Assembly (NCBI GenBank): GCA_047495785.1
Contig: JBLDXI010000018.1
Span: forward strand, 579,464 to 643,463
From: Lepidodermella squamata
Lineage: Eukaryota; Animalia; Gastrotricha
Direction: 5' to 3'
DNA length: 64,000 bases
Shown here: positions 1 to 63,990 of the stretch, piece after piece
Numbering within the stretch: the stretch's first letter is position 1
Layout of the letters: every line of letters starts with the position of its first letter
Program-made: the position numbers and the translations under genes
The notes under the pieces: generated by a model
What the model was told of the DNA's origin: nothing
The model's input: only the letters and a program-made list of their open reading frames with translations
Databases searched by the model: none

Positions 1-113
1 GCGCGATCCAACGGCGCCGTACTACACTTGGCTGAACACGGAGCCGTACGGCAGTAACGAAGCACTGCCGGATGGAATCGACGGACCGAAAATCTTTAAC
101 GGTTCTAGTACAT
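1..113 (+). CDS. Exon (partial): central part of CTLD #1
   Basis: Frame 2 is open (RDPTAPYYTWLNTEPYGSNEALPDGIDGPKIFNGSST). It ends T|GTAAGT at 114, phase 1, splitting a Cys codon. Confidence 0.72.
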
Positions 114-9802: not shown

Positions 9803-9991
9803 ATGAAGCTTTCCGCTCCTTTGTCAGGCTGCTATGTTGACATCATATAGCTCCTTTGCTAAATGACGCTTAAACTTTTTTATATTAGGCGGCGTGTGGC
9901 TTTGCCTAACGGCACAAAACAAGTGACGTGTTACACTTAAACTATGATAGCTAACGACACACTACGACATGGATTTAAGCTCTGCGCAAAT

Positions 9992-10002
9992 AATAAAATA
10001 AA
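9992..10002 (+). terminator. Candidate polyadenylation signal (two overlapping AATAAA)
   Basis: AATAAAATAAA downstream of the predicted stop codon. Confidence 0.45.
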
Positions 10003-40100: not shown

Positions 40101-43100
40101 ACGGCTGATATCGCAGTTTTGGACCCTTGTGCGTGTCACCACGATGCAGAATCGTGCTCCACCGCGGTAAATCAGCCATATTCTGGCATCATTCGAGAGT
40201 GGCAGCATTGCCAAACACGTTTGCAGCCGATTGGCGCACATATCGGATGACCGATATTTCGCTGCCAGCCAAAACGGCTGATATCGCAGTTTTGGACCCT
40301 TGTGCGTATCACCACGATGCAGAATCGTGCTCCACCGCGGTAAATCAGCCATATTCTGGCATCATTCGAGAGTGGCAGCGTTGCCAAACACGTTTGCAGC
40401 CGATTGGCGCACATTTCGGATGACCGATATTTCGCTGCCAGCCCAAACGCCTGAAATCGCAGTTTTGGACCCTTGTGCGTATCACCACGATGCAGAATCG
40501 TGCTCCACCGCGGTAAATCAGACATATTCTGGCATCATTCGATAGTGGCAGCATTGCCAAACACGTTTGCAGCCGATTGGCGCACATATCGGATGACCGA
40601 TATTTCGCTGCCAGCAAAAACGGCTGAAATCGCAGTTTTCGACCCTTGTGCGTATCACCACGATGCAGAATCGTGCTCCACCGCGGTAAATCAGACATAT
40701 TCTGGCATCATTCGATAGTGGCAGCATTGCCAAACACGTTTGCAGCCGATTGGCGCACATTTCGGATGACCGATATTTCGCTGCCAGCCAAAACGGCTGA
40801 TATCGCAGTTTTGGACCCTTGTGCGTATCACCACGATGCAGAATCGTGCTCCACCGCGGTAAATCAGCCATATTCTGGCATCATTCGAGAGTGGCAGCGT
40901 TGCCAAACACGTTTGCAGCCGATTGGCGCACATATCGGATGACCGATATTTCGCTGCCAGCCAAAACGGCTGATATCGCAGTTTTGGACCCTTGTGCGTA
41001 TCACCACGATGCAGAATCGTGCTCCACCGCGGTAAATCAGCCATATTCTGGCATCATTCGATAGTGGCAGCATTGCCAAACACGTTTGCAGCCGATTGGC
41101 GCACATTTCGGATGACCGATATTTCGCTGCCAGCCAAAACGGCTGATATCGCAGTTTTCGACCCTTGTGCGTATCACCACGATGCAGAAACGTGCTCCAC
41201 CGCGGTAAATCAGCCATATTCTGGCATCATTCGATAGTGGCAGCATTGCCAAACACGTTTGCAGCCGATTGGCGCACATTTCGGATGACCGATATTTCGC
41301 TGCCAGCCAAAACGGCTGAAATCGCAGTTTTGGACCATTGTGCGTATCACCATGATGCAGAATCGTGCTCCACCGCGGTAAATCAGCCATATTCTGGCAT
41401 CATTCGAGAGTGGCAGCGTTGCCAAACACGTTTGCAGCCGATTGGCGCACATTTCGGATGACCGATATTTCGCTGCCAGCCAAAACGGCTGATATCGCAG
41501 TTTTGGACCCTTGTGCGTGTCACCACGATGCAGAATCGTGCTCCACCGCGGTAAATCAGCCATATTCTGGCATCATTCGAGAGTGGCAGCATTGCCAAAC
41601 ACGTTTGCAGCCGATTGGCGCACATATCGGATGACCGATATTTCGCTGCCAGCCAAAACGGCTGATATCGCAGTTTTGGACCCTTGTGCGTATCACCACG
41701 ATGCAGAATCGTGCTCCACCGCGGTAAATCAGCCATATTCTGGCATCATTCGAGAGTGGCAGCGTTGCCAAACACGTTTGCAGCCGATTGGCGCACATTT
41801 CGGATGACCGATATTTCGCTGCCAGCCCAAACGCCTGAAATCGCAGTTTTGGACCCTTGTGCGTATCACCACGATGCAGAATCGTGCTCCACCGCGGTAA
41901 ATCAGACATATTCTGGCATCATTCGATAGTGGCAGCATTGCCAAACACGTTTGCAGCCGATTGGCGCACATATCGGATGACCGATATTTCGCTGCCAGCA
42001 AAAACGGCTGAAATCGCAGTTTTCGACCCTTGTGCGTATCACCACGATGCAGAATCGTGCTCCACCGCGGTAAATCAGACATATTCTGGCATCATTCGAT
42101 AGTGGCAGCATTGCCAAACACGTTTGCAGCCGATTGGCGCACATTTCGGATGACCGATATTTCGCTGCCAGCCAAAACGGCTGATATCGCAGTTTTGGAC
42201 CCTTGTGCGTATCACCACGATGCAGAATCGTGCTCCACCGCGGTAAATCAGCCATATTCTGGCATCATTCGAGAGTGGCAGCGTTGCCAAACACGTTTGC
42301 AGCCGATTGGCGCACATATCGGATGACCGATATTTCGCTGCCAGCCAAAACGGCTGATATCGCAGTTTTGGACCCTTGTGCGTATCACCACGATGCAGAA
42401 TCGTGCTCCACCGCGGTAAATCAGCCATATTCTGGCATCATTCGATAGTGGCAGCATTGCCAAACACGTTTGCAGCCGATTGGCGCACATTTCGGATGAC
42501 CGATATTTCGCTGCCAGCCAAAACGGCTGATATCGCAGTTTTCGACCCTTGTGCGTATCACCACGATGCAGAATCGTGCTCCACCGCGGTAAATCAGCCA
42601 TATTCTGGCATCATTCGATAGTGGCAGCATTGCCAAACACGTTTGCAGCCGATTGGCGCACATATCGGATGACCGATATTTCGCTGCCAGCCAAAACGGC
42701 TGATATCGCAGTTTTGGACCCTTGTGCGTATCACCACGATGCAGAATCGTGCTCCACCGCGGTAAATCAGCCATATTCTGGCATCATTCGAGAGTGGCAG
42801 CATTGCCAAACACGTTTGCAGCCGATTGGCGCACAGATCGGATGACCGATATTTCGCTGCCAGCCAAAACGGCTGAAATCGCAGTTTTCGACCCTTGTGC
42901 GTATCACCACGATGCAGAATCGTGCTCCACCGCGGTAAATCAGCCATATTCTGGCATCATTCGATAGTGGCAGCATTGCCAAACACGTTTGCAGCCGATT
43001 GGCGCACATTTCGGATGACCGATATTTCGCTGCCAGCCAAAACGGCTGAAATCGCAGTTTTGGACCATTGTGCGTATCACCATGATGCAGAATCGTGCTC

Positions 43101-46100
43101 CACCGCGGTAAATCAGCCATATTCTGGCATCATTCGAGAGTGGCAGCGTTGCCAAACACGTTTGCAGCCGATTGGCGCACATTTCGGATGACCGATATTT
43201 CGCTGCCAGCCAAAACGGCTGATATCGCAGTTTTCGACCCTTGTGCGTATCACCACGATGCAGAATCGTGCTCCACCGCGGTAAATCAGCCATATTCTGG
43301 CATCATTCGATAGTGGCAGCATTGCCAAACACGTTTGCAGCCGATTGGCGCACATATCGGATGACCGATATTTCGCTGCCAGCCAAAACGGCTGATATCG
43401 CAGTTTTGGACCCTTGTGCGTATCACCACGATGCAGAATCGTGCTCCACCGCGGTAAATCAGCCATATTCTGGCATCATTCGAGAGTGGCAGCATTGCCA
43501 AACACGTTTGCAGCCGATTGGCGCACATATCGGATGACCGATATTTCGCTGCCAGCCAAAACGGCTGAAATCGCAGTTTTGGACCATTGTGCGTATCACC
43601 ATGATGCAGAATCGTGCTCCACCGCGGTAAATCAGCCATATTCTGGCATCATTCGAGAGTGGCAGCGTTGCCAAACACGTTTGCAGCCGATTGGCGCACA
43701 TTTCGGATGACCGATATTTCGCTGCCAGCCAAAACGGCTGATATCGCAGTTTTGGACCCTTGTGCGTATCACCACGATGCAGAATCGTGCTCCACCGCGG
43801 TAAATCAGCCATATTCTGGCATCATTCGATAGTGGCAGCATTGCCAAACACGTTTGCAGCCGATTGGCGCACATTTCGGATGACCGATATTTCGCTGCCA
43901 GCCAAAACGGCTGATATCGCAGTTTTCGACCCTTGTGCGTATCACCACGATGCAGAATCGTGCTCCACCGCGGTAAATCAGCCATATTCTGGCATCATTC
44001 GATAGTGGCAGCATTGCCAAACACGTTTGCAGCCGATTGGCGCACATATCGGATGACCGATATTTCGCTGCCAGCCAAAACGGCTGATATCGCAGTTTTG
44101 GACCCTTGTGCGTATCACCACGATGCAGAATCGTGCTCCACCGCGGTAAATCAGCCATATTCTGGCATCATTCGAGAGTGGCAGCATTGCCAAACACGTT
44201 TGCAGCCGATTGGCGCACATATCGGATGACCGATATTTCGCTGCCAGCCAAAACGGCTGAAATCGCAGTTTTCGACCCTTGTGCGTATCACCACGATGCA
44301 GAATCGTGCTCCACCGCGGTAAATCAGACATATTCTGGCATCATTCGATAGTGGCAGCATTGCCAAACACGTTTGCAGCCGATTGGCGCACATTTCGGAT
44401 GACCGATATTTCGCTGCCAGCCAAAACGGCTGATATCGCAGTTTTGGACCCTTGTGCGTATCACCACGATGCAGAATCGTGCTCCACCGCGGTAAATCAG
44501 CCATATTCTGGCATCATTCGATAGTGGCAGCATTGCCAAACACGTTTGCAGCCGATTGGCGCACATATCGGATGACCGATATTTCGCTGCCAGCCAAAAC
44601 GGCTGATATCGCAGTTTCGGACCCTTGTGCGTATCACCACGATGCAGAATCGTGCTCCACCGCGGTAAATCAGACATATTCTGGCATCATTCGATAGTGG
44701 CAGCATTGCCAAACACGTTTGCAGCCGATTGGCGCACATTTCGGATGACCGATATTTCGCTGCCAGCCAAAACGGCTGATATCGCAGTTTTGGACCCTTG
44801 TGCGTATCACCACGATGCAGAATCGTGCTCCACCGCGGTAAATCAGCCATATTCTGGCATCATTCGAGAGTGGCAGCGTTGCCAAACACGTTTGCAGCCG
44901 ATTGGCGCACATTTCGGATGACCGATATTTCGCTGCCAGCCAAAACGGCTGATATCGCAGTTTTGGACCCTTGTGCGTATCACCACGATGCAGAATCGTG
45001 CTCCACCGCGGTAAATCAGCCATATTCTGGCATCATTCGATAGTGGCAGCATTGCCAAACACGTTTGCAGCCGATTGGCGCACATATCGGATGACCGATA
45101 TTTCGCTGCCAGCCAAAACGGCTGATATCGCAGTTTCGGACCCTTGTGCGTATCACCACGATGCAGAATCGTGCTCCACCGCGGTAAATCAGCCATATTC
45201 TGGCATCATTCGATAGTGGCAGCATTGCCAAACACGTTTGCAGCCGATTGGCGCACATATCGGATGACCGATATTTCGCTGCCAGCCAAAACGGCTGATA
45301 TCGCAGTTTTGGACCCTTGTGCGTATCACCACGATGCAGAATCGTGCTCCACCGCGGTAAATCAGCCATATTCTGGCATCATTCGAAAGTGGCAGCGTTG
45401 CCAAACACGTTTGCAGCCGATTGGCGCACATTTCGGATGACCGATATTTCGCTGCCAGCCAAAACGGCTGATATCGCAGTTTTGGACCCTTGTGCGTATC
45501 ACCACGATGCAGAATCGTGCTCCACCGCGGTAAATCAGACATACTCTGGCATCATTCGATAGTGGCAGCATTGCCAAACACGTTTGCAGCCGATTGGCGC
45601 ACATTTCGGATGACCGATATTTCGCTGCCAGCCAAAACGGCTGAAATCGCAGTTTTGGACCCTTGTGCGTAGCACCACGATGCAGAATCGTGCTCCACCG
45701 CGGTAAGTCAGCCATATTCTGGCATCATTCGAGAGTGGCAGCATTGCCAAACACGTTTGCAGCCGATTGGCGCACATATCGGATGACCGATATTTCGCTG
45801 CCAGCCAAAACGGCTGAAATCGCAGTTTTCGACCCTTGTGCGTATCACCACGATGCAGAATCGTGCTCCACCGCGGTAAATCAGCCATATTCTGGCATCA
45901 TTCGATAGTGGCAGCATTGCCAAACACGTTTGCAGCCGATTGGCGCACATTTCGGATGACCGATATTTCGCTGCCAGCCAAAACGGCTGAAATCGCAGTT
46001 TTCGACCCTTGTGCGTATCACCACGATGCAGAATCGTGCTCCACCGCGGTAAATCAGACATATTCTGGCATCATTCGATAGTGGCAGCATTGCCAAACAC

Positions 46101-49100
46101 GTTTGCAGCCGATTGGCGCACATTTCGGATGACCGATATTTCGCTGCCAGCCAAAACGGCTGAAATCGCAGTTTTGGACCATTGTGCGTATCACCATGAT
46201 GCAGAATCGTGCTCCACCGCGGTAAATCAGCCATATTCTGGCATCATTCGAGAGTGGCAGCGTTGCCAAACACGTTTGCAGCCGATTGGCGCACATTTCG
46301 GATGACCGATATTTCGCTGCCAGCCAAAACGGCTGATATCGCAGTTTTGGACCCTTGTGCGTATCACCACGATGCAGAATCGTGCTCCACCGCGGTAAAT
46401 CAGACATACTCTGGCATCATTCGATAGTGGCAGCATTGCCAAACACGTTTGCAGCCGATTGGCGCACATTTCGGATGACCGATATTTCGCTGCCAGCCAA
46501 AACGGCTGAAATCGCAGTTTTGGACCCTTGTGCGTAGCACCACGATGCAGAATCGTGCTCCACCGCGGTAAGTCAGCCATATTCTGGCATCATTCGAGAG
46601 TGGCAGCATTGCCAAACACGTTTGCAGCCGATTGGCGCACATATCGGATGACCGATATTTCGCTGCCAGCCAAAACGGCTGAAATCGCAGTTTTCGACCC
46701 TTGTGCGTATCACCACGATGCAGAATCGTGCTCCACCGCGGTAAATCAGCCATATTCTGGCATCATTCGATAGTGGCAGCATTGCCAAACACGTTTGCAT
46801 CCGATTGGCGCAGATTTCGGATGACCGATATTTCGCTGCCAGCCAAAACGGCTGAAATCGCAGTTTTGGACCATTGTGCGTATCACCATGATGCAGAATC
46901 GTGCTCCACCGCGGTAAATCAGCCATATTCTGGCATCATTCGAGAGTGGCAGCGTTGCCAAACACGTTTGCAGCCGATTGGCGCACATTTCGGATGACCG
47001 ATATTTCGCTGCCAGCCAAAACGGCTGAAATCGCAGTTTTCGACCCTTGTGCGTATCACCACGATGCAGAATCGTGCTCCACCGCGGTAAATCAGCCATA
47101 TTCTGGCATCATTCGATAGTGGCAGCATTGCCAAACACGTTTGCAGCCGATTGGCGCACATTTCGGATGACCGATATTTCGCTGCCAGCCAAAACGGCTG
47201 AAATCGCAGTTTTCGACCCTTGTGCGTATCACCACGATGCAGAATCGTGCTCCACCGCGGTAAATCAGACATATTCTGGCATCATTCGATAGTGGCAGCA
47301 TTGCCAAACACGTTTGCAGCCGATTGGCGCACATTTCGGATGACCGATATTTCGCTGCCAGCCAAAACGGCTGAAATCGCAGTTTTGGACCATTGTGCGT
47401 ATCACCATGATGCAGAATCGTGCTCCACCGCGGTAAATCAGCCATATTCTGGCATCATTCGAGAGTGGCAGCGTTGCCAAACACGTTTGCAGCCGATTGG
47501 CGCACATTTCGGATGACCGATATTTCGCTGCCAGCCAAAACGGCTGATATCGCAGTTTTGGACCCTTGTGCGTATCACCACGATGCAGAATCGTGCTCCA
47601 CCGCGGTAAATCAGCCATATTCTGGCATCATTCGAGAGTGGCAGCGTTGCCAAACACGTTTGCAGCCGATTGGCGCACATTTCGGATGACCGATATTTCG
47701 CTGCCAGCCAAAACGGCTGAAATCGCAGTTTTCGACCCTTGTGCGTATCACCACGATGCAGAATCGTGCTCCACCGCGGTAAATCAGACATACTCTGGCA
47801 TCATTCGATAGTGGCAGCATTGCCAAACACGTTTGCAGCCGATTGGCGCACATTTCGGATGACCGATATTTCGCTGCCAGCCAAAACGGCTGAAATCGCA
47901 GTTTTGGACCCTTGTGCGTAGCACCACGATGCAGAATCGTGCTCCACCGCGGTAAGTCAGCCATATTCTGGCATCATTCGAGAGTGGCAGCATTGCCAAA
48001 CACGTTTGCAGCCGATTGGCGCACATATCGGATGACCGATATTTCGCTGCCAGCCAAAACGGCTGAAATCGCAGTTTTCGACCCTTGTGCGTATCACCAC
48101 GATGCAGAATCGTGCTCCACCGCGGTAAATCAGCCATATTCTGGCATCATTCGATAGTGGCAGCATTGCCAAACACGTTTGCAGCCGATTGGCGCACATT
48201 TCGGATGACCGATATTTCGCTGCCAGCCAAAACGGCTGAAATCGCAGTTTTCGACCCTTGTGCGTATCACCACGATGCAGAATCGTGCTCCACCGCGGTA
48301 AATCAGACATATTCTGGCATCATTCGATAGTGGCAGCATTGCCAAACACGTTTGCAGCCGATTGGCGCACATTTCGGATGACCGATATTTCGCTGCCAGC
48401 CAAAACGGCTGAAATCGCAGTTTTGGACCATTGTGCGTATCACCATGATGCAGAATCGTGCTCCACCGCGGTAAATCAGCCATATTCTGGCATCATTCGA
48501 GAGTGGCAGCGTTGCCAAACACGTTTGCAGCCGATTGGCGCACATTTCGGATGACCGATATTTCGCTGCCAGCCAAAACGGCTGAAATCGCAGTTTTGGA
48601 CCATTGTGCGTATCACCATGATGCAGAATCGTGCTCCACCGCGGTAAATCAGCCATATTCTGGCATCATTCGAGAGTGGCAGCGTTGCCAAACACGTTTG
48701 CAGCCGATTGGCGCACATATCGGATGACCGATATTTCGCTGCCAGCCAAAACGGCTGATATCGCAGTTTCGGACCCTTGTGCGTATCACCACGATGCAGA
48801 ATCGTGCTCCACCGCGGTAAATCAGACATATTCTGGCATCATTCGATAGTGGCAGCATTGCCAAACACGTTTGCAGCCGATTGGCGCACATTTCGGATGA
48901 CCGATATTTCGCTGCCAGCCAAAACGGCTGATATCGCAGTTTTGGACCCTTGTGCGTATCACCACGATGCAGAATCGTGCTCCACCGCGGTAAATCAGCC
49001 ATATTCTGGCATCATTCGAGAGTGGCAGCGTTGCCAAACACGTTTGCAGCCGATTGGCGCACATTTCGGATGACCGATATTTCGCTGCCAGCCAAAACGG

Positions 49101-52100
49101 CTGATATCGCAGTTTTGGACCCTTGTGCGTATCACCACGATGCAGAATCGTGCTCCACCGCGGTAAATCAGCCATATTCTGGCATCATTCGATAGTGGCA
49201 GCATTGCCAAACACGTTTGCAGCCGATTGGCGCACATATCGGATGACCGATATTTCGCTGCCAGCCAAAACGGCTGATATCGCAGTTTCGGACCCTTGTG
49301 CGTATCACCACGATGCAGAATCGTGCTCCACCGCGGTAAATCAGCCATATTCTGGCATCATTCGATAGTGGCAGCATTGCCAAACACGTTTGCAGCCGAT
49401 TGGCGCACATATCGGATGACCGATATTTCGCTGCCAGCCAAAACGGCTGATATCGCAGTTTTGGACCCTTGTGCGTATCACCACGATGCAGAATCGTGCT
49501 CCACCGCGGTAAATCAGCCATATTCTGGCATCATTCGAAAGTGGCAGCGTTGCCAAACACGTTTGCAGCCGATTGGCGCACATTTCGGATGACCGATATT
49601 TCGCTGCCAGCCAAAACGGCTGATATCGCAGTTTTGGACCCTTGTGCGTATCACCACGATGCAGAATCGTGCTCCACCGCGGTAAATCAGACATACTCTG
49701 GCATCATTCGATAGTGGCAGCATTGCCAAACACGTTTGCAGCCGATTGGCGCACATTTCGGATGACCGATATTTCGCTGCCAGCCAAAACGGCTGAAATC
49801 GCAGTTTTGGACCCTTGTGCGTAGCACCACGATGCAGAATCGTGCTCCACCGCGGTAAGTCAGCCATATTCTGGCATCATTCGAGAGTGGCAGCATTGCC
49901 AAACACGTTTGCAGCCGATTGGCGCACATATCGGATGACCGATATTTCGCTGCCAGCCAAAACGGCTGAAATCGCAGTTTTCGACCCTTGTGCGTATCAC
50001 CACGATGCAGAATCGTGCTCCACCGCGGTAAATCAGCCATATTCTGGCATCATTCGATAGTGGCAGCATTGCCAAACACGTTTGCAGCCGATTGGCGCAC
50101 ATTTCGGATGACCGATATTTCGCTGCCAGCCAAAACGGCTGAAATCGCAGTTTTCGACCCTTGTGCGTATCACCACGATGCAGAATCGTGCTCCACCGCG
50201 GTAAATCAGACATATTCTGGCATCATTCGATAGTGGCAGCATTGCCAAACACGTTTGCAGCCGATTGGCGCACATTTCGGATGACCGATATTTCGCTGCC
50301 AGCCAAAACGGCTGAAATCGCAGTTTTGGACCATTGTGCGTATCACCACGATGCAGAATCGTGCTCCACCGCGGTAAATCAGCCATATTCTGGCATCATT
50401 CGATAGTGGCAGCATTGCCAAACACGTTTGCAGCCGATTGGCGCACATTTCGGATGACCGATATTTCGCTGCCAGCCAAAACGGCTGAAATCGCAGTTTT
50501 CGACCCTTGTGCGTATCACCACGATGCAGAATCGTGCTCCACCGCGGTAAATCAGACATATTCTGGCATCATTCGATAGTGGCAGCATTGCCAAACACGT
50601 TTGCAGCCGATTGGCGCACATTTCGGATGACCGATATTTCGCTGCCAGCCAAAACGGCTGAAATCGCAGTTTTGGACCATTGTGCGTATCACCATGATGC
50701 AGAATCGTGCTCCACCGCGGTAAATCAGCCATATTCTGGCATCATTCGAGAGTGGCAGCGTTGCCAAACACGTTTGCAGCCGATTGGCGCACATTTCGGA
50801 TGACCGATATTTCGCTGCCAGCCAAAACGGCTGATATCGCAGTTTTGGACCCTTGTGCGTATCACCACGATGCAGAATCGTGCTCCACCGCGGTAAATCA
50901 GCCATATTCTGGCATCATTCGAGAGTGGCAGCGTTGCCAAACACGTTTGCAGCCGATTGGCGCACATTTCGGATGACCGATATTTCGCTGCCAGCCAAAA
51001 CGGCTGAAATCGCAGTTTTCGACCCTTGTGCGTATCACCACGATGCAGAATCGTGCTCCACCGCGGTAAATCAGACATACTCTGGCATCATTCGATAGTG
51101 GCAGCATTGCCAAACACGTTTGCAGCCGATTGGCGCACATTTCGGATGACCGATATTTCGCTGCCAGCCAAAACGGCTGAAATCGCAGTTTTGGACCCTT
51201 GTGCGTAGCACCACGATGCAGAATCGTGCTCCACCGCGGTAAGTCAGCCATATTCTGGCATCATTCGAGAGTGGCAGCATTGCCAAACACGTTTGCAGCC
51301 GATTGGCGCACATATCGGATGACCGATATTTCGCTGCCAGCCAAAACGGCTGAAATCGCAGTTTTCGACCCTTGTGCGTATCACCACGATGCAGAATCGT
51401 GCTCCACCGCGGTAAATCAGCCATATTCTGGCATCATTCGATAGTGGCAGCATTGCCAAACACGTTTGCAGCCGATTGGCGCACATTTCGGATGACCGAT
51501 ATTTCGCTGCCAGCCAAAACGGCTGAAATCGCAGTTTTCGACCCTTGTGCGTATCACCACGATGCAGAATCGTGCTCCACCGCGGTAAATCAGACATATT
51601 CTGGCATCATTCGATAGTGGCAGCATTGCCAAACACGTTTGCAGCCGATTGGCGCACATTTCGGATGACCGATATTTCGCTGCCAGCCAAAACGGCTGAA
51701 ATCGCAGTTTTGGACCATTGTGCGTATCACCATGATGCAGAATCGTGCTCCACCGCGGTAAATCAGCCATATTCTGGCATCATTCGAGAGTGGCAGCGTT
51801 GCCAAACACGTTTGCAGCCGATTGGCGCACATTTCGGATGACCGATATTTCGCTGCCAGCCAAAACGGCTGATATCGCAGTTTTGGACCCTTGTGCGTAT
51901 CACCACGATGCAGAATCGTGCTCCACCGCGGTAAATCAGCCATATTCTGGCATCATTCGAGAGTGGCAGCGTTGCCAAACACGTTTGCAGCCGATTGGCG
52001 CACATTTCGGATGACCGATATTTCGCTGCCAGCCAAAACGGCTGAAATCGCAGTTTTGGACCATTGTGCGTATCACCATGATGCAGAATCGTGCTCCACC

Positions 52101-53750
52101 GCGGTAAATCAGCCATATTCTGGCATCATTCGAGAGTGGCAGCGTTGCCAAACACGTTTGCAGCTGATTGGCGCACATTTCGGATGACCGATATTTCGCT
52201 GCCAGCCAAAACGGCTGAAATCGCAGTTTTCGACCCTTGTGCGTATCACCACGATGCAGAATCGTGCTCCACCGCGGTAAATCAGACATATTCTGGCATC
52301 ATTCGATAGTGGCAGCATTGCCAAACACGTTTGCAGCCGATTGGCGCACATATCGGATGACCGATATATCGCTGCCAGCCAAAACGGCTGATATCGCAGT
52401 TTTGGACCATTGTGCGTATCACCATGATGCAGAATCGTGCTCCACCGCGGTAAATCAGACATATTCTGGCATCATTCGAGAGTGGCAGCGTTGCCAAACA
52501 CGTTTGCAGCCGATTGGCGCACATTTCGGATGACCGATATTTCGCTGCCAGCCAAAACGGCTGAAATCGCAGTTTTGGACCATTGTGCGTATCACCATGA
52601 TGCAGAATCGTGCTCCACCGCGGTAAATCAGCCATATTCTGGCATCATTCGAGAGTGGCAGCGTTGCCAAACACGTTTGCAGCCGATTGGCGCACATTTC
52701 GGATGACCGATATTTCGCTGCCAGCCAAAACGGCTGAAATCGCAGTTTTGGACCATTGTGCGTATCACCATGATGCAGAATCGTGCTCCACCGCGGTAAA
52801 TCAGCCATATTCTGGCATCATTCGAGAGTGGCAGCGTTGCCAAACACGTTTGCAGCCGATTGGCGCACATTTCGGATGACCGATATTTCGCTGCCAGCCA
52901 AAACGGCTGATATCGCAGTTTTGGACCCTTGTGCGTATCACCACGATGCAGAATCGTGCTCCACCGCGGTAAATCAGCCATATTCTGGCATCATTCGAGA
53001 GTGGCAGCGTTGCCAAACACGTTTGCAGCCGATTGGCGCACATTTCGGATGACCGATATTTCGCTGCCAGCCAAAACGGCTGATATCGCAGTTTTGGACC
53101 CTTGTGCGTATCACCACGATGCAGAATCGTGCTCCACCGCGGTAAATCAGCCATATTCTGGCATCATTCGATAGTGGCAGCATTGCCAAACACGTTTGCA
53201 GCCGATTGGCGCACATATCGGATGACCGATATATCGCTGCCAGCCAAAACGGCTGATATCGCAGTTTTGGACCCTTGTGCGTATCACCACGATGCAGAAT
53301 CGTGCTCCACCGCGGTAAATCAGACATACTCTGGCATCATTCGATAGTGGCAGCATTGCCAAACACGTTTGCAGCCGATTGGCGCACATTTCGGATGACC
53401 GATATTTCGCTGCCAGCCAAAACGGCTGAAATCGCAGTTTTGGACCCTTGTGCGTAGCACCACGATGCAGAATCGTGCTCCACCGCGGTAAGTCAGCCAT
53501 ATTCTGGCATCATTCGAGAGTGGCAGCATTGCCAAACACGTTTGCAGCCGATTGGCGCACATATCGGATGACCGATATTTCGCTGCCAGCCAAAACGGCT
53601 GAAATCGCAGTTTTCGACCCTTGTGCGTATCACCACGATGCAGAATCGTGCTCCACCGCGGTAAATCAGCCATATTCTGGCATCATTCGATAGTGGCAGC
53701 ATTGCCAAACACGTTTGCAGCCGATTGGCGCAGATTTCGGATGACCGATA
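10129..53750 (+). repeat. 173-bp tandem satellite, subfamily A (~252 monomers, head-to-tail)
   Basis: Consensus TTGGCGCACATWTCGGATGACCGATATTTCGCTGCCAGCCAAAACGGCTGAWATCGCAGTTTTGGACCCTTGTGCGTATCACCACGATGCAGAATCGTGCTCCACCGCGGTAAATCAGCCATATTCTGGCATCATTCGATAGTGGCAGCATTGCCAAACACGTTTGCAGCCGA. ORF starts recur at exact 173 spacing (10198 to 53621 = 251 x 173). Confidence 0.99.
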
Positions 53751-56700
53751 TTTCGCTGCCAGCCAAAACGGCTGAAATCGCCGATTTGGACCCTCGTGCG
53801 TATCACCACGATGCAGAATCGTGCTCCACCGCGGTAAATCAGCCATATTCAGGCATCATTCGATAGTGGCAGCGTTGCCAAACACGTTTGCAGCCGATTG
53901 GCGCTCATTTCGGATGACCGATATTTCGTAGCCAGCCAAAACGGCTCAAATCGCCGATTTGGACCCTTGTGCGTATCACCACGATGCAGAATCGTGCTCC
54001 ACCGCGGTAAATCAGCCATATTCAGGCATCATTCGATAGTGGCAGCGTTGCCAAACACGTTTGCAGCCGATTGGCGCTCATTTCGGATGACCGATATTTA
54101 GTAGCCAGCCAAAACGGCTGAAATCGCCGATTTGCACCCTCGTGCGTATCACCACGATGCAGAATCGTGCTCCACCGCGGTAAATCAGCCATATTCAGGC
54201 ATCATTCGATAGTGGCAGCGTTGCCAAACACGTTTGCAGCCGATTGGCGCTCATTTCGGATGACCGATATTTCGTAGCCAGCCAAAACGGCTCAAATCGC
54301 CGATTTGGACCCTTGTGCGTATCACCACGATGCAGAATCGTGCTCCACCGCGGTAAATCAGCCATATTCAGGCATCATTCGATAGTGGCAGCGTTGCCAA
54401 ACACGTTTGCAGCCGATTGGCGCTCATTTCGGATGACCGATATTTAGTAGCCAGCCAAAACGGCTGAAATCGCCGATTTGGACCCTTGTGCGCATCACCA
54501 CGATGCAGAATCGTGCTCCACCGCGGTAAATCAGCCATATTCAGGCATCATTCGATAGTGGCAGCGTTGCCAAACACGTTTGCAGCCGATTGGCGCTCAT
54601 TTCGGGTGACCGATATTTCGCAGCCAGCCAAAACGGCTGAAATCGCCGTTTTGGAGCCTTGTGCGTATCACCACGATGCAGAATCGAGCTCCACCGCGGT
54701 AAATCAGCCATATTCAGGCATCATTCGATAGTGGCAGCGTTGCCAAACACGTTTGCAGCCGATTGGCGCACATTTCGGATGACCGATATTTCGTAGCCAG
54801 CCAGAACGGCTGAAATCGCCGATTTGCACCCTCGTGCGTATCACCACGATGCAGAATCGTGCTCCACCGCGGTAAATCAGCCATATTCAGGCGTCATTCG
54901 ATAGTGGCAGCGTTGGCAAACACGTTTGCAGCCGATTGGCGCACATTTCGGATGACCGATATTTCGTAGCCAGCCAAAACGGCTGAAATCGCCGATTTGG
55001 ACCCTCGTGCGTATCACCACGATGCAGAATCGTGATCCACCGCGGTAAATCAGCCATATTCAGGCATCATTCGATAGTGGCAGCGTTGCCAAAAACGTTT
55101 GCAGCCGATTGGCGCACATTTCGGATGACCGATATTTCGTAGCCAGCCAAAACGGCTGAAATCGCCGATTTGCACCCTCGTGCGTATCACCACGATGCAG
55201 AATCGTGCTCCACCGCGGTAAATCAGCCATATTCAGGCATCATTCGATAGTGGCAGCGTTGCCAAAAACGTTTGCAGCCGATTGGCGCACATTTCGGATG
55301 ACCGATATTTCGTAGCCAGCCAAAACGGCTGAAATCGCCGATTTGCACCCTCGTGCGTATCACCACGATGCAGAATCGTGCTCCACCGCGGTAAATCAGC
55401 CATATTCAGGCGTCATTCGATAGTGGCAGCGTTGCCAAACACGTTTGCAGCCGATTGGCGCACATTTCCGATGACCGATATTTCGTAGCCAGCCAAAACG
55501 GCTGAAATCGCCGATTTGGACCCTCGTGCGTATCACCACGATGCAGAATCGTGCTCCACCGCGGTAAATCAGCCATATTCAGGCATCATTCGATAGTGGC
55601 AGCGTTGCCAAACACGTTTGCAGCCGATTGGCGCTCATTTCGGATGACCGATATTTCGTAGCCAGCCAAAACGGCTCAAATCGCCGATTTGGACCCTTGT
55701 GCGTATCACCACGATGCAGAATCGTGCTCCACCGCGGTAAATCAGCCATATTCAGGCATCATTCGATAGTGGCAGCGTTGCCAAACACGTTTGCAGCCGA
55801 TTGGCGCTCATTTCGGATGACCGATATTTCGTAGCCAGCCAAAACGGCTCAAATCGCCGATTTGGACCCTTGTGCGTATCACCACGATGCAGAATCGTGC
55901 TCCACCGCGGTAAATCAGCCATATTCAGGCATCATTCGATAGTGGCAGCGTTGCCAAACACGTTTGCAGCCGATTGGCGCTCATTTCGGATGACCGATAT
56001 TTCGTAGCCAGCCAAAACGACTGAAATCGCCGATTTGGACCGTCGTGCGTAACACCACGATGCAGAATCGTGCTCCACCGCGGTAAATCAGCCATATTCA
56101 GGCATCATTCGATAGTGGCAGCGTTGCCAAACACGTTTGCAGCCGATTGGCGCTCATTTCGGATGACCGATATTTCGTAGCCAGCCAAAACGGCTGAAAT
56201 CGCCGATTTGGACCCTTGTGCGTATCACCACGATGCAGAATCGTGCTCCACCGCGGTAAATCAGCCATATTCAGGCATCATTCGATAGTGGCAGCGTTGC
56301 CAAACACGTTTGCAGCCGATTGGCGCTCATTTCGGATGACCGATATTTAGTAGCCAGCCAAAACGGCTGAAATCGCCGATTTGGACCCTTGTGCGCATCA
56401 CCACGATGCAGAATCGTGCTCCACCGCGGTAAATCAGCCATATTCAGGCATCATTCGATAGTGGCAGCGTTGCCAAACACGTTTGCAGCCGATTGGCGCT
56501 CATTTCGGATGACCGATATTTAGTAGCCAGCCAAAACGGCTGAAATCGCCGATTTGCACCCTCGTGCGTATCACCACGATGCAGAATCGTGCTCCACCGC
56601 GGTAAATCAGCCATATTCAGGCATCATTCGATAGTGGCAGCGTTGCCAAACACGTTTGCAGCCGATTGGCGCTCATTTCGGATGACCGATATTTCGTAGC

Positions 56701-59700
56701 CAGCCAAAACGGCTCAAATCGCCGATTTGGACCCTTGTGCGTATCACCACGATGCAGAATCGTGCTCCACCGCGGTAAATCAGCCATATTCAGGCATCAT
56801 TCGATAGTGGCAGCGTTGCCAAACACGTTTGCAGCCGATTGGCGCTCATTTCGGATGACCGATATTTAGTAGCCAGCCAAAACGGCTGAAATCGCCGATT
56901 TGGACCCTTGTGCGCATCACCACGATGCAGAATCGTGCTCCACCGCGGTAAATCAGACATATTCTGGCATCATTCGATAGTGGCAGCATTGCCAAACACG
57001 TTTGCAGCCGATTGGCGCTCATTTCGGATGACCGATATTTAGTAGCCAGCCAAAACGGCTGAAATCGCCGATTTGGACCCTTGTGCGCATCACCACGATG
57101 CAGAATCGTGCTCCACCGCGGTAAATCAGCCATATTCAGGCATCATTCGATAGTGGCAGCGTTGCCAAACACGTTTGCAGCCGATTGGCGCTCATTTCGG
57201 ATGACCGATATTTAGTAGCCAGCCAAAACGGCTGAAATCGCCGATTTGCACCCTCGTGCGTATCACCACGATGCAGAATCGTGCTCCACCGCGGTAAATC
57301 AGCCATATTCAGGCATCATTCGATAGTGGCAGCGTTGCCAAACACGTTTGCAGCCGATTGGCGCTCATTTCGGATGACCGATATTTCGTAGCCAGCCAAA
57401 ACGGCTCAAATCGCCGATTTGGACCCTTGTGCGTATCACCACGATGCAGAATCGTGCTCCACCGCGGTAAATCAGCCATATTCAGGCATCATTCGATAGT
57501 GGCAGCGTTGCCAAACACGTTTGCAGCCGATTGGCGCTCATTTCGGATGACCGATATTTCGCTGCCAGCCAAAACGGCTGAAATCGCCGATTTGGACCCT
57601 CGTGCGTATCACCACGATGCAGAATCGTGCTCCACCGCGGTAAATCAGCCATATTCAGGCATCATTCGATAGTGGCAGCGTTGCCAAACACGTTTGCAGC
57701 CGATTGGCGCTCATTTCGGATGACCGATATTTCGTAGCCAGCCAAAACGGCTCAAATCGCCGATTTGGACCCTTGTGCGTATCACCACGATGCAGAATCG
57801 TGCTCCACCGCGGTAAATCAGCCATATTCAGGCATCATTCGATAGTGGCAGCGTTGCCAAACACGTTTGCAGCCGATTGGCGCTCATTTCGGATGACCGA
57901 TATTTAGTAGCCAGCCAAAACGGCTGAAATCGCCGATTTGCACCCTCGTGCGTATCACCACGATGCAGAATCGTGCTCCACCGCGGTAAATCAGCCATAT
58001 TCAGGCATCATTCGATAGTGGCAGCGTTGCCAAACACGTTTGCAGCCGATTGGCGCTCATTTCGGATGACCGATATTTCGTAGCCAGCCAAAACGGCTCA
58101 AATCGCCGATTTGGACCCTTGTGCGCATCACCACGATGCAGAATCGTGCTCCACCGCGGTAAATCAGCCATATTCAGGCATCATTCCATAGTGGCAGCGT
58201 TGCCAAACACGTTTGCAGCCGATTGGCGCTCATTTCGGGTGACCGATATTTCGCAGCCAGCCAAAACGGCTGAAATCGCCGTTTTGGAGCCTTGTGCGTA
58301 TCACCACGATGCAGAATCGAGCTCCACCGCGGTAAATCAGCCATATTCAGGCATCATTCGATAGTGGCAGCGTTGCCAAACACGTTTGCAGCCGATTGGC
58401 GCACATTTCGGATGACCGATATTTCGTAGCCAGCCAGAACGGCTGAAATCGCCGATTTGCACCCTCGTGCGTATCACCACGATGCAGAATCGTGCTCCAC
58501 CGCGGTAAATCAGCCATATTCAGGCGTCATTCGATAGTGGCAGCGTTGGCAAACACGTTTGCAGCCGATTGGCGCACATTTCGGATGACCGATATTTCGT
58601 AGCCAGCCAAAACGGCTGAAATCGCCGATTTGGACCCTCGTGCGTATCACCACGATGCAGAATCGTGCTCCACCGCGGTAAATCAGCCATATTCAGGCAT
58701 CATTCGATAGTGGCAGCGTTGCCAAAAACGTTTGCAGCCGATTGGCGCACATTTCGGATGACCGATATTTCGTAGCCAGCCAAAACGGCTGAAATCGCCG
58801 ATTTGCACCCTCGTGCGTATCACCACGATGCAGAATCGTGCTCCACCGCGGTAAATCAGCCATATTCAGGCATCATTCGATAGTGGCAGCGTTGCCAAAA
58901 ACGTTTGCAGCCGATTGGCGCACATTTCGGATGACCGATATTTCGTAGCCAGCCAAAACGGCTGAAATCGCCGATTTGCACCCTCGTGCGTATCACCACG
59001 ATGCAGAATCGTGCTCCACCGCGGTAAATCAGCCATATTCAGGCGTCATTCGATAGTGGCAGCGTTGCCAAACACGTTTGCAGCCGATTGGCGCTCATTT
59101 CGGATGACCGATATTTCGTAGCCAGCCAAAACGGCTCAAATCGCCGATTTGGACCCTTGTGCGTATCACCACGATGCAGAATCGTGCTCCACCGCGGTAA
59201 ATCAGCCATATTCAGGCATCATTCGATAGTGGCAGCGTTGCCAAACACGTTTGCAGCCGATTGGCGCTCATTTCGGATGACCGATATTTCGTAGCCAGCC
59301 AAAACGGCTCAAATCGCCGATTTGGACCCTTGTGCGTATCACCACGATGCAGAATCGTGCTCCACCGCGGTAAATCAGCCATATTCAGGCATCATTCGAT
59401 AGTGGCAGCGTTGCCAAACACGTTTGCAGCCGATTGGCGCTCATTTCGGATGACCGATATTTCGTAGCCAAGCCAAAACGACTGAAATCGCCGATTTGGA
59501 CCGTCGTGCGTAACACCACGATGCAGAATCGTGCTCCACCGCGGTAAATCAGCCATATTCAGGCATCATTCGATAGTGGCAGCGTTGCCAAACACGTTTG
59601 CAGCCGATTGGCGCTCATTTCGGATGACCGATATTTCGTAGCCAGCCAAAACGGCTGAAATCGCCGATTTGGACCCTTGTGCGTATCACCACGATGCAGA
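53751..59700 (+). repeat. 173-bp satellite, subfamily B (~34 monomers)
   Basis: Diagnostic changes relative to A: GCTGCC>GTAGCC, CGCAGTTTT>CGCCGATTT, ATTCTGG>ATTCAGG, frequent GCGCACA>GCGCTCA, GCGTTG nearly fixed. Confidence 0.97.
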
Positions 59701-62700
59701 ATCGTGGTGATGCGCACAAGGGTCCAAATCGGCGATTTCAGCCGTTTTGGCTGGCTACTAAATATCGGTCATCCGAAATGAGCGCCAATCGGCTGCAAAC
59801 GTGTTTGGCAATGCTGCCACTATCGAATGATGCCAGAATATGTCTGATTTACCGCGGTGGAGCACGATTCTGCATCGTGGTGATGCGCACAAGGGTCCAA
59901 ATCGGCGATTTCAGCCGTTTTGGCTGGCTACTAAATATCGGTCATCCGAAATGAGCGCCAATCGGCTGCAAACGTGTTTGGCAACGCTGCCACTATCGAA
60001 TGATGCCTGAATATGGCTGATTTACCGCGGTGGAGCACGATTCTGCATCGTGGTGATACGCACAAGGGTCCAAATCGGCGATTTGAGCCGTTTTGGCTGG
60101 CTACGAAATATCGGTCATCCGAAATGAGCGCCAATCGGCTGCAAACGTGTTTGGCAACGCTGCCACTATCGAATGATGCCTGAATATGGCTGATTTACCG
60201 CGGTGGAGCACGATTCTGCATCGTGGTGATACGCACGAGGGTGCAAATCGGCGATTTCAGCCGTTTTGGCTGGCTACTAAATATCGGTCATCCGAAATGA
60301 GCGCCAATCGGCTGCAAACGTGTTTGGCAACGCTGCCACTATCGAATGATGCCTGAATATGGCTGATTTACCGCGGTGGAGCACGATTCTGCATCGTGGT
60401 GATGCGCACAAGGGTCCAAATCGGCGATTTCAGCCGTTTTGGCTGGCTACTAAATATCGGTCATCCGAAATGAGCGCCAATCGGCTGCAAACGTGTTTGG
60501 CAACGCTGCCACTATCGAATGATGCCTGAATATGGCTGATTTACCGCGGTGGAGCACGATTCTGCATCGTGGTGATACGCACAAGGGTCCAAATCGGCGA
60601 TTTCAGCCGTTTTGGCTGGCTACGAAATATCGGTCATCCGAAATGAGCGCCAATCGGCTGCAAACGTGTTTGGCAACGCTGCCACTATCGAATGATGCCT
60701 GAATATGGCTGATTTACCGCGGTGGAGCACGATTCTGCATCGTGGTGTTACGCACGACGGTCCAAATCGGCGATTTCAGTCGTTTTGGCTGGCTACGAAA
60801 TATCGGTCATCCGAAATGAGCGCCAATCGGCTGCAAACGTGTTTGGCAACGCTGCCACTATCGAATGATGCCTGAATATGGCTGATTTACCACGGTGGAG
60901 CACGATTCTGCATCGTGGTGATACGCACAAGGGTCCAAATCGGCGATTTGAGCCGTTTTGGCTGGCTACGAAATATCGGTCATCCGAAATGAGCGCCAAT
61001 CGGCTGCAAACGTGTTTGGCAACGCTGCCACTATCGAATGATGCCTGAATATGGCTGATTTACCGCGGTGGAGCACGATTCTGCATCGTGGTGATACGCA
61101 CAAGGGTCCAAATCGGCGATTTGAGCCGTTTTGGCTGGCTACGAAATATCGGTCATCCGAAATGAGCGCCAATCGGCTGCAAACGTGTTTGGCAACGCTG
61201 CCACTATCGAATGATGCCTGAATATGGCTGATTTACCGCGGTGGAGCACGATTCTGCATCGTGGTGATACGCACGAGGGTCCAAATCGGCGATTTCAGCC
61301 GTTTTGGCTGGCTACGAAATATCGGTCATCGGAAATGTGCGCCAATCGGCTGCAAACGTGTTTGGCAACGCTGCCACTATCGAATGACGCCTGAATATGG
61401 CTGATTTACCGCGGTGGAGCACGATTCTGCATCGTGGTGATACGCACGAGGGTGCAAATCGGCGATTTCAGCCGTTTTGGCTGGCTACGAAATATCGGTC
61501 ATCCGAAATGTGCGCCAATCGGCTGCAAACGTTTTTGGCAACGCTGCCACTATCGAATGATGCCTGAATATGGCTGATTTACCGCGGTGGAGCACGATTC
61601 TGCATCGTGGTGATACGCACGAGGGTGCAAATCGGCGATTTCAGCCGTTTTGGCTGGCTACGAAATATCGGTCATCCGAAATGTGCGCCAATCGGCTGCA
61701 AACGTTTTTGGCAACGCTGCCACTATCGAATGATGCCTGAATATGGCTGATTTACCGCGGTGGATCACGATTCTGCATCGTGGTGATACGCACGAGGGTC
61801 CAAATCGGCGATTTCAGCCGTTTTGGCTGGCTACGAAATATCGGTCATCCGAAATGTGCGCCAATCGGCTGCAAACGTGTTTGCCAACGCTGCCACTATC
61901 GAATGACGCCTGAATATGGCTGATTTACCGCGGTGGAGCACGATTCTGCATCGTGGTGATACGCACGAGGGTGCAAATCGGCGATTTCAGCCGTTCTGGC
62001 TGGCTACGAAATATCGGTCATCCGAAATGTGCGCCAATCGGCTGCAAACGTGTTTGGCAACGCTGCCACTATCGAATGATGCCTGAATATGGCTGATTTA
62101 CCGCGGTGGAGCTCGATTCTGCATCGTGGTGATACGCACAAGGCTCCAAAACGGCGATTTCAGCCGTTTTGGCTGGCTGCGAAATATCGGTCACCCGAAA
62201 TGAGCGCCAATCGGCTGCAAACGTGTTTGGCAACGCTGCCACTATCGAATGATGCCTGAATATGGCTGATTTACCGCGGTGGAGCACGATTCTGCATCGT
62301 GGTGATGCGCACAAGGGTCCAAATCGGCGATTTCAGCCGTTTTGGCTGGCTACTAAATATCGGTCATCCGAAATGAGCGCCAATCGGCTGCAAACGTGTT
62401 TGGCAACGCTGCCACTATCGAATGATGCCTGAATATGGCTGATTTACCGCGGTGGAGCACGATTCTGCATCGTGGTGATACGCACAAGGGTCCAAATCGG
62501 CGATTTGAGCCGTTTTGGCTGGCTACGAAATATCGGTCATCCGAAATGAGCGCCAATCGGCTGCAAACGTGTTTGGCAACGCTGCCACTATCGAATGATG
62601 CCTGAATATGGCTGATTTACCGCGGTGGAGCACGATTCTGCATCGTGGTGATACGCACGAGGGTGCAAATCGGCGATTTCAGCCGTTTTGGCTGGCTACT

Positions 62701-63990
62701 AAATATCGGTCATCCGAAATGAGCGCCAATCGGCTGCAAACGTGTTTGGCAACGCTGCCACTATCGAATGATGCCTGAATATGGCTGATTTACCGCGGTG
62801 GAGCACGATTCTGCATCGTGGTGATACGCACAAGGGTCCAAATCGGCGATTTGAGCCGTTTTGGCTGGCTACGAAATATCGGTCATCCGAAATGAGCGCC
62901 AATCGGCTGCAAACGTGTTTGGCAACGCTGCCACTATCGAATGATGCCTGAATATGGCTGATTTACCGCGGTGGAGCACGATTCTGCATCGTGGTGATAC
63001 GCACGAGGGTCCAAATCGGCGATTTCAGCCGTTTTGGCTGGCAGCGAAATATCGGTCATCCGAAATCTGCGCCAATCGGCTGCAAACGTGTTTGGCAATG
63101 CTGCCACTATCGAATGATGCCAGAATATGGCTGATTTACCGCGGTGGAGCACGATTCTGCATCGTGGTGATACGCACAAGGGTCGAAAACTGCGATTTCA
63201 GCCGTTTTGGCTGGCAGCGAAATATCGGTCATCCGATATGTGCGCCAATCGGCTGCAAACGTGTTTGGCAATGCTGCCACTCTCGAATGATGCCAGAATA
63301 TGGCTGACTTACCGCGGTGGAGCACGATTCTGCATCGTGGTGCTACGCACAAGGGTCCAAAACTGCGATTTCAGCCGTTTTGGCTGGCAGCGAAATATCG
63401 GTCATCCGAAATGTGCGCCAATCGGCTGCAAACGTGTTTGGCAATGCTGCCACTATCGAATGATGCCAGAGTATGTCTGATTTACCGCGGTGGAGCACGA
63501 TTCTGCATCGTGGTGATACGCACAAGGGTCCAAAACTGCGATATCAGCCGTTTTGGCTGGCAGCGATATATCGGTCATCCGATATGTGCGCCAATCGGCT
63601 GCAAACGTGTTTGGCAATGCTGCCACTATCGAATGATGCCAGAATATGGCTGATTTACCGCGGTGGAGCACGATTCTGCATCGTGGTGATACGCACAAGG
63701 GTCCAAAACTGCGATATCAGCCGTTTTGGCTGGCAGCGAAATATCGGTCATCCGAAATGTGCGCCAATCGGCTGCAAACGTGTTTGGCAACGCTGCCACT
63801 CTCGAATGATGCCAGAATATGGCTGATTTACCGCGGTGGAGCACGATTCTGCATCGTGGTGATACGCACAAGGGTCCAAAACTGCGATATCAGCCGTTTT
63901 GGCTGGCAGCGAAATATCGGTCATCCGAAATGTGCGCCAATCGGCTGCAAACGTGTTTGGCAACGCTGCCACTCTCGAATGATGCAGAAT
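59701..63990 (-). repeat. Inverted block of the 173-bp satellite (~25 monomers), reverse complement of ~52,815-57,099
   Basis: Variant-for-variant mirror with coordinate sum 116,800 (e.g. ORF 53621-53866+ vs 62934-63179-; 56666-56869+ vs 59931-60134-), including the B-to-A boundary. Confidence 0.97.

What the first reader, a model, noticed from the sequence alone, without database searches (positions are those of the whole stretch)
59680..59720. Array inversion breakpoint sits exactly on the monomer's own hairpin (CACGAT-GCAGA-ATCGTG)
Seen: the forward array reads ...ATCACCACGAT GCAGA ATCGTG and, instead of CTCC, continues GTGATGCGCACAAGGG, the reverse strand. The 6-bp inverted repeat present in every monomer is the junction microhomology, with no bases added or lost. 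Inference: a 3' end in this hairpin re-primed on the opposite strand (fold-back or template switch), so the satellite carries built-in inversion sites every 173 bp. Established alternative: phi29 multiple displacement amplification makes the same kind of product (inversion at short microhomology, with an intervening gap of a few kb).
Basis: partly seen in the sequence, partly recalled or inferred. Interest (0 to 1): 0.8.

Follow-up and report, generated by a model that had tools for sequence, protein, structure and literature searches.

The report
Amplification fold-back artefact at contig end
The strand flip in this 173-bp satellite is real in the assembled sequence, but it is almost certainly a fold-back chimera made during whole-genome amplification and left at the tip of a contig, not a natural inversion site.

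Summary
A forward 173-bp array (10129-59706) flips strand at the monomer's 6-bp stem / 5-nt loop hairpin (59690-59706), with a 6-nt overlap and no bases added or lost.

What follows is not an old inverted array. 59701-63985 is the reverse complement of 52815-57099 with 1 mismatch in 4285 nt; every other register has at least 118. The two copies are separated by a 2.6-kb spacer.

The window end is the end of contig C18, so the inverted arm is the contig's last 4.3 kb. A second strand switch lies 15 nt before the tip.

The assembly shows this defect repeatedly:
- 8 of 21 sampled contig starts carry the same kind of near-identical inverted duplication, mostly in sequence unrelated to this satellite.
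- 11 of 21 start with an untrimmed PacBio barcoded adapter (bcAd1003), whose barcode occurs 190 times in the assembly.

Size, contig count and GC fit the published Lepidodermella squamata assembly, made by phi29 amplification of one animal plus HiFi reads. A 6-nt overlap and a 2.6-kb distance are typical of phi29 inverted chimeras.

Genome-wide there is no second junction at this hairpin. One other strand switch exists, at C11 ~41.3 kb, on a different palindrome.

Verdict: artefact, low interest.

The parts
10129..59706 (+). Forward 173-bp satellite array: 287 monomers, one of them 174 nt. A sub-family shift begins near 53.7 kb.
52815..57099 (+). Source arm: the genuine forward stretch that is copied, reverse-complemented, at the contig tip.
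   Evidence: 1 mismatch in 4285 nt (55908 against 60892). All other in-phase registers have at least 118 mismatches.
57100..59700 (+). Spacer of 2601 nt (15 monomers) between the two arms. It is ordinary forward array that continues from the source arm.
59690..59706 (+). Junction hairpin CACGAT-GCAGA-ATCGTG. The overlap shared by both segments is ATCGTG (59701-59706), which is the reverse complement of CACGAT at 57094-57099.
   Evidence: Genome-wide pattern search finds this junction only.
59701..63985 (-). Inverted arm: the chimeric fold-back copy of 52815-57099, forming the last 4.3 kb of contig C18.
63981..64000 (+). Second strand switch and contig tip. The reverse array ends in ...GAATGATGC and continues AGAAT(G)CGTGCTCCA, which is the forward hairpin half plus flank with one extra G. 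The overlap is GATGC, or the imperfect inverted repeat GATGC(C)AGAAT between monomer positions 3-12 and 40-50.

Best explanation
The junction is an inverted chimera made in the test tube during phi29 multiple displacement amplification. It was captured in a HiFi read that the assembler used to extend the tip of contig C18 inside a satellite it could not finish.

Proposed course (inferred):
- A growing strand copying the forward array was displaced when its 3' end read ...ATCGTG.
- That end annealed to the complementary CACGAT 15 monomers back, on a displaced copy or on its own strand.
- It was then extended, copying 4.3 kb of the array backwards.
- Near the molecule's end a second switch of the same kind occurred at another inverted repeat of the monomer.

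The hairpin is the breakpoint because an inverted switch needs a reverse-complementary pair on one strand, and the monomer offers only five such pairs of 6 nt or more.

Shown: the structure, its place at the contig tip, its recurrence at other tips, and the adapters. Inferred: that the polymerase was phi29, and that the genome is the published Lepidodermella squamata assembly.
For: 1. The arm is a near-exact inverted copy (4284 of 4285 nt) of a specific stretch 2.6 kb upstream. Other registers differ at 118 or more sites. The event is therefore extremely recent or not biological.
2. The window is C18:579464-643463 and the contig is 643463 nt long, so the arm is the contig's last 4.3 kb, less than one read length. 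A second switch lies 15 nt from the tip.
3. Of 21 contig 5' ends sampled, 8 carry inverted duplications of 99.6-100% identity. Arms are 2.2 to over 4.3 kb and spacers are 69, 110, 123, 166, 250, 342, 1217 and 2574 nt. Seven are not in a tandem repeat; C9 is in a different, 178-bp one. C17 is a triple zigzag. Five interior stretches (46 kb) have none.
4. Eleven of 21 tips begin with all or part of ACACATCTCGTGAGAGT. The 16-mer occurs 190 times in the assembly against about 0.06 expected. All eight minus-strand hits in C1-C21 lie exactly at contig 3' ends. It is the barcode plus T overhang of PacBio adapter bcAd1003. Contig tips are therefore raw read ends.
5. Roberts et al. 2024 (PMC11660948) used REPLI-g amplification of one Lepidodermella squamata, half a shared Sequel II cell and hifiasm 0.15.2, with no adapter trimming described. 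They report 122 Mb, 157 contigs, N50 3.9 Mb and 43% GC. Here there are 121.23 Mb in 151 contigs of similar sizes.
6. A review of phi29 chimeras (PMC9984789) says that inverted chimeras are the commonest kind. Overlaps are mostly 5-8 nt, distances are usually under 10 kb, and the hotspots are reverse-complementary pairs on one strand. Here the overlap is 6 nt and the distance 2.6 kb.
7. No second junction at this hairpin exists in the assembly.
Against: - I could not see raw reads. The one run that holds the sequence (X11) is kept only as short assembled contigs and is probably the source data.
  - A contig of depth 9.3 lies on 59707-59718 without a loose end. I could not see whether it crosses 59706/59707.
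- The C18 3' tip does not end in the adapter.
- The organism's name is coded, so the link to the amplified library rests on matching statistics.
- A strand switch at C11 ~41.3 kb sits on another palindrome of the monomer, and its arms are not mirror copies. This satellite may therefore also have genuine strand switches.
Confidence: 0.85

Rival explanations
1. A real, very recent inverted duplication in the animal's genome. A replication fork or a broken end switched template between the hairpin of one monomer and the hairpin 15 monomers away. The assembler then stopped because the two identical arms tangle the graph.
For: - Microhomology-mediated fold-back is a known process in cells.
- Identical arms would indeed break an assembly.
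- A low-depth contig covers 59707-59718.
- Another strand switch, at a palindrome and without mirrored arms, exists at C11 ~41.3 kb.
Against: - The arm is only 4.3 kb long, ends at the contig tip, and has a second switch 15 nt before the end.
- The same architecture sits at 8 of 21 sampled contig tips, seven of them outside any tandem repeat, beside library adapters.
- This hairpin carries no other junction among about 830 monomers.
Confidence: 0.07
2. An in-vitro artefact that is not specific to phi29. Examples are fold-back synthesis or ligation during end repair in SMRTbell library preparation, or a misjoin by the assembler.
For: - Ligation-based long-read libraries are also reported to make inverted-repeat chimeras (PMC13141652; abstract only).
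- Adapters embedded inside contigs (C11:3958, C9:6216, C13:1117) show that the assembler stitched raw read ends.
Against: - A 6-nt overlap made of a reverse-complementary pair points to annealing and priming, not blunt ligation.
- No adapter sits at the junction.
- The spacer sizes match the distances reported for phi29 chimeras.
- The best-matching project used phi29 amplification.
Confidence: 0.06
3. An old inversion breakpoint between two satellite arrays of opposite orientation, as seen in many centromeric satellites.
For: Strand switches between arrays are common in satellites. GC skew flips cleanly at the junction.
Against: The reverse arm is 99.98% identical, monomer by monomer, to one specific stretch 2.6 kb away. 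Monomers of the array otherwise differ at many sites (at least 118 mismatches in any other register).
Confidence: 0.01

Closest known systems
Inverted chimeras of phi29 multiple displacement amplification (Lasken and Stockwell 2007 mechanism, as reviewed in PMC9984789); 'palindromic reads' in long-read data after whole-genome amplification (Pacasus preprint 10.1101/173872; PMC13265396)
   Same: - Two adjacent segments lie on opposite strands of one locus.
- The overlap is 6 nt (5-8 is typical) and is formed by a reverse-complementary pair on one strand.
- The distance is 2.6 kb (under 10 kb is typical).
- More than one switch occurs in one molecule.
- The defect recurs at unrelated loci of the same data set.
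   Different: This one survived into a published-grade contig, at its tip, instead of being filtered as a read. It lies in a tandem repeat, so the partner site could be any of many monomers.
PacBio read with a missed or missing SMRTbell adapter (perfect palindromic read)
   Same: An inverted duplicate at a read end. Adapters were not trimmed in this assembly.
   Different: Those reads are palindromes without a spacer, centred on the molecule's end or on an adapter. Here there is a 2.6-kb spacer, a 6-nt overlap and no adapter at the junction.
Fold-back inversions and palindrome formation at short inverted repeats in living cells (from my own knowledge, not checked here: the Tetrahymena rDNA palindrome; template switching at nearby inverted repeats in yeasts)
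   Same: A short inverted repeat acts as the switch point and produces an inverted duplication with a spacer.
   Different: Those produce chromosome-scale arms present in every cell. Here the arm is one read-sized piece at a contig tip, in an assembly full of such tips.

Membership tests
phi29 MDA inverted chimera | The DNA was amplified by multiple displacement amplification | tested here: inconclusive
   Organism names are coded. Size, contig number, GC, contig sizes, the HiFi barcoded adapter and the year of the run fit the REPLI-g/HiFi assembly of Lepidodermella squamata. Identity is not proven.
phi29 MDA inverted chimera | Adjacent segments map to opposite strands of the same locus, usually under 10 kb apart | tested here: met
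   59701-63985 is the reverse complement of 52815-57099. The distance is 2601 nt.
phi29 MDA inverted chimera | Short overlap (mostly 5-8 nt) formed by a reverse-complementary pair on one strand | tested here: met
   ATCGTG at 59701-59706 pairs with CACGAT at 57094-57099, a 6-nt overlap. The second junction uses GATGC.
phi29 MDA inverted chimera | The same kind of junction recurs at unrelated loci of the same data set | tested here: met
   8 of 21 sampled contig 5' tips have it, against 0 of 5 interior stretches.
phi29 MDA inverted chimera | Junction absent from unamplified DNA, or supported by only one or a few molecules | not testable with these tools
   Only assembled contigs of one run, probably the source, could be laid. 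No bridging contig was shown. Depth is 9.3 at 59707-59718 against 10^4-10^5 summed depth beside it.
Natural strand switch between old satellite arrays | The arms are independent arrays, diverged like other monomers | tested here: not met
   1 mismatch in 4285 nt in one register, at least 118 in all others.
Missed-adapter palindromic PacBio read | Palindrome without a spacer, centred on the molecule end or an adapter | tested here: not met
   The spacer is 2601 nt. No adapter 16-mer occurs anywhere in the window.
Germline fold-back inverted duplication | Arms and flanks supported beyond one read length on both sides | tested here: not met
   The contig ends 4.3 kb after the junction, 15 nt after a second switch.

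The most novel reading that the evidence does not exclude
The short palindromes of this satellite's monomer could be genuine template-switch hotspots in the animal. Candidates are CACGAT-N5-ATCGTG, and in the C11 sub-family GCAAAC-NN-GTTTGC. On this reading the C18 junction, or at least the C11 ~41.3 kb head-to-head junction whose roughly 40-kb arms are not mirror copies, records a real fold-back or inversion event. That would make the monomer's own hairpins the places where arrays flip strand.
Probability: 0.08. Interest if true: 0.5.

Novelty: not a real feature. Interest (0 to 1): 0.08.

Why it matters
As biology it does not matter: the junction says nothing reliable about how this satellite evolves.

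As quality control it does matter. This assembly carries untrimmed PacBio adapters (190 copies of the barcode) and fold-back chimeras at roughly a third of the contig tips sampled. The best-matching paper reports that no chimeric contigs were detected.

Any palindrome, inverted duplication or strand switch within about 10 kb of a contig end, or beside an embedded adapter, should be treated as suspect in this genome. That applies to other findings of this scan on the same genome.

Tried and rejected
- Spacer-less mirror symmetry about 59698 breaks down after about 230 nt. The true register is 2.6 kb away.
- A DNA search of the own genome with 1 kb of array failed because there were too many candidates. 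I used exact patterns instead.
- Read evidence is inconclusive.
  - Only one run (X11) holds the sequence, as short contigs of 66 nt or less. None of the listed pieces bridges 59706/59707.
  - Three contigs leave at 59706 with the normal forward continuation.
  - The other runs (X1, X2, X7) laid nothing.
I did not try to read those places by other means.
- I tested whether the C11 strand switch is a giant palindrome.
  - Two variants, one unique in the assembly (C11:41567) and one unique within the first 10 kb of C11 (C11:6871), have no mirrored partner.
  - The positions of 172-nt monomers on the two arms do not mirror each other.
  - So it is not a simple fold-back, and its nature stays open.
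- The hairpin as a stable structure: the normal monomer's 6-bp stem folds no better than shuffled sequence in context (z = -0.9). Only the chimeric junction makes a long stem. There is no sign of a cruciform-prone site.
Full report
**1. What is in the sequence**

The window holds 10 kb of ordinary sequence (GC about 0.41), then a very regular 173-bp satellite on the + strand (10129-59706, 287 monomers, one of them 174 nt). The same satellite then runs on the - strand to 63985.

At the switch the text reads ...ATCAC CACGAT GCAGA ATCGTG GTGAT GCGCAC.... The forward monomer fits up to 59706 and the reverse one fits from 59701. The two segments therefore share ATCGTG, and nothing is added or lost. 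The exact 17-nt stem-loop is in 234 of 287 forward monomers.

**2. The reverse arm is a copy, not an old array**

I compared each reverse monomer with every forward monomer. The 24 reverse monomers equal forward monomers 247-270, in order.

Base by base, the reverse complement of 59701-63985 equals 52815-57099 with one mismatch in 4285 nt (55908 against 60892, CCGCGG against CCGTGG). Every other in-phase register has 118 or more mismatches.

The structure is therefore source arm, then a 2601-nt spacer (15 monomers), then an inverted copy. The 3' end ...ATCGTG (59701-59706) did not pair within its own hairpin. It paired with CACGAT at 57094-57099.

**3. Where it sits**

The window is G000:C18:579464-643463, and contig C18 is 643463 nt long. 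The inverted arm is therefore the last 4.3 kb of a contig.

The last 15 nt are not reverse array. After ...GAATGATGC the text continues AGAAT(G)CGTGCTCCA, which is the forward hairpin half and its flank with one extra G. This is a second strand switch. It uses the imperfect inverted repeat between monomer positions 3-12 and 40-50.

**4. Is the hairpin a general inversion site?**

- Hairpin-specific junction patterns, with up to 2 mismatches, find this one place and no reverse-to-forward counterpart in 121 Mb.
- Anchor-pair patterns catch any switch between monomers, wherever in the monomer it falls. With the first anchor they again find only this junction.
- With a second anchor, kept in all three arrays examined (C18, C15, C11), they also find:
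  - a head-to-head junction at C11 ~41.3 kb;
  - two dispersed head-to-head pairs of diverged monomer-like sequence (C4:2162638, C64:918571).
- The assembly holds about 830 monomers, in C18, C15:3864-13800 and C11:1 to about 80 kb.
- The C11 junction lies on another palindrome, GCAAAC-NN-GTTTGC. Its arms are not mirror copies.

'A built-in inversion site every 173 bp' is therefore not supported. What the three junctions share is only that each uses an inverted repeat of the monomer. The monomer has five such pairs of 6 nt or more.

**5. The assembly has this defect in many places**

I fetched the first 10 kb of 21 contigs.

- Adapters at the tips:
  - Eleven contigs begin with all or part of ACACATCTCGTGAGAGT.
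  - The 16-mer occurs 190 times in the assembly against about 0.06 expected.
  - All eight minus-strand hits in C1-C21 lie exactly at contig 3' ends, and many further copies are internal.
  - It is the barcode plus T overhang of PacBio adapter bcAd1003 (also listed as barcode 3).
  - Contig tips are therefore untrimmed read ends.
- Fold-backs at the tips:
  - Eight of the 21 tips carry inverted duplications of 99.6-100% identity. Arms run from 2.2 to over 4.3 kb.
  - Spacers are 69 (C20), 110 (C10), 123 (C7), 166 (C9), 250 (C8), 342 (C17), 1217 (C4) and 2574 nt (C3).
  - Five of them start right after the adapter or within 40 nt of the tip.
  - C17 is a forward-reverse-forward zigzag, and C9 lies in a different, 178-bp tandem repeat.
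  - For C3, C4 and C8 the arms run off the fetched 10 kb, so I cannot show that they reach the tip.
- Control: five interior stretches (46 kb) have nothing of the kind. This is a small control.

With a 4285-nt arm, a 2601-nt spacer and a second switch, the C18 tip is one more member of this class.

**6. Which process**

The statistics fit the assembly of Roberts et al. 2024 (PMC11660948):

| | Paper | This genome |
|---|---|---|
| Size | 122 Mb | 121.23 Mb |
| Contigs | 157 | 151 |
| N50 / contig sizes | N50 3.9 Mb | contigs of matching sizes |
| GC | 43% | 0.39-0.44 in the non-satellite part of the window |

- The paper used one Lepidodermella squamata lysed and amplified with the REPLI-g single-cell kit. 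Sequencing was on half of a shared Sequel II cell, hence a barcode.
- HiFi reads were extracted and assembled with hifiasm 0.15.2, and no trimming is described (this genome).
- The paper reports that Alvis found no chimeric contig in this assembly. Its read filter looked only for read ends mapping to different contigs, which cannot see fold-backs.

A review of phi29 chimeras (PMC9984789) states the following:
- Inverted chimeras are the commonest kind.
- They form when a displaced 3' end anneals to a displaced strand.
- Overlaps are mostly 5-8 nt and distances are usually under 10 kb.
- The hotspots are reverse-complementary pairs on one strand.

The C18 junction has a 6-nt overlap and a 2.6-kb distance. 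The spacers at the other tips fall in the same range.

**7. Reads**

Only run X11 (2024, kept as assembled contigs, probably the source data) holds the stretch.

- Summed word depth is 10^4 to 2 x 10^5 on both arms but 9.3 at 59707-59718.
- Three contigs leave at 59706 with the normal forward continuation CTCCACCGCGG...
- No listed piece bridges the junction, and no piece is longer than 66 nt.

This neither proves nor excludes a few supporting reads. In amplified DNA, several reads of one chimeric product would not be independent anyway.

**8. Verdict**

The priming idea is right in kind, but the event is best explained as a phi29 inverted chimera left at a contig tip (0.85).

Rivals:
- a real recent inverted duplication (0.07);
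- another in-vitro artefact (0.06);
- an old array inversion (0.01, refuted by the arm identity).

The only open thread of biological interest is the C11 head-to-head junction.

Noticed in passing
G000 genome-wide; e.g. C2:1-16, C7:1-16, C2:2937636-2937651, C11:3958-3973, C9:6216-6231, C13:1117-1132: The PacBio bcAd1003 barcode (ACACATCTCGTGAGAG, followed by T) occurs 190 times in the assembly. It sits at many contig starts and ends and at more than 100 internal places, almost all on the + strand. The adapters were never trimmed.
   Followed up: partly
L013 (C7) 17-8682; L016 (C10) 18-6251; L025 (C20) 18-8470; L022 (C17) 4-10000; L015 (C9) 18-4537; L014 (C8) 1301-10000; L010 (C4) 2975-10000; L009 (C3) 2650-10000: Near-identical inverted duplications (99.6-100%) at 8 of 21 sampled contig 5' tips, with spacers of 69-2574 nt. 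C17 is a forward-reverse-forward zigzag. These are probably amplification chimeras.
   Followed up: partly
G000:C11:41113-41646 (junction near 41293-41302): Head-to-head strand switch of a sub-family of the same satellite. About 41 kb of reverse array meets at least 38 kb of forward array. The join is at a second monomer palindrome, GCAAAC-GT-GTTTGC. The arms are not mirror copies, so whether it is real or a chimeric join is undecided.
   Followed up: partly
G000:C4:2162638-2163063 and G000:C64:918571-919042: Two dispersed loci with a diverged monomer-like sequence in head-to-head pairs about 400 nt apart. They could be the inverted ends of a mobile element related to the satellite.
   Followed up: no
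L017 (C11:1-10000), adapter at 3958-3974: Contig C11 starts inside the satellite. An adapter copy is embedded in the array. The 22 monomers before it all match the C18 consensus at the same 96.45% over 169 nt, and those after it vary (94.1-96.5%).
   Followed up: partly
L019 (C13:1-1200): The contig starts in (CCCTAA)n telomere repeat, with an adapter copy embedded at 1117. The telomere motif is therefore TTAGGG.
   Followed up: no
window 53779-59706: Sub-family shift within the array. The last 35 or so monomers differ from the main consensus at 8-10 sites (for example CGCCGATTTGG instead of CGCAGTTTTGG). Earlier parts show repeating runs of monomer variants, which looks like higher-order structure.
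   Followed up: partly
L003-L004 (C15:3864-13800): A small interior array of the same satellite with units of 172/173 and 155/156 nt, 3.9 kb from the contig start.
   Followed up: no
L011 (C5:1-60): A 31-kb contig that begins with the adapter, followed by what looks like small-subunit rRNA sequence. It is probably an rDNA unit.
   Followed up: no
window 7966-8066: A short 30-bp tandem repeat (3.3 copies) in the unique flank, 2 kb before the array.
   Followed up: no
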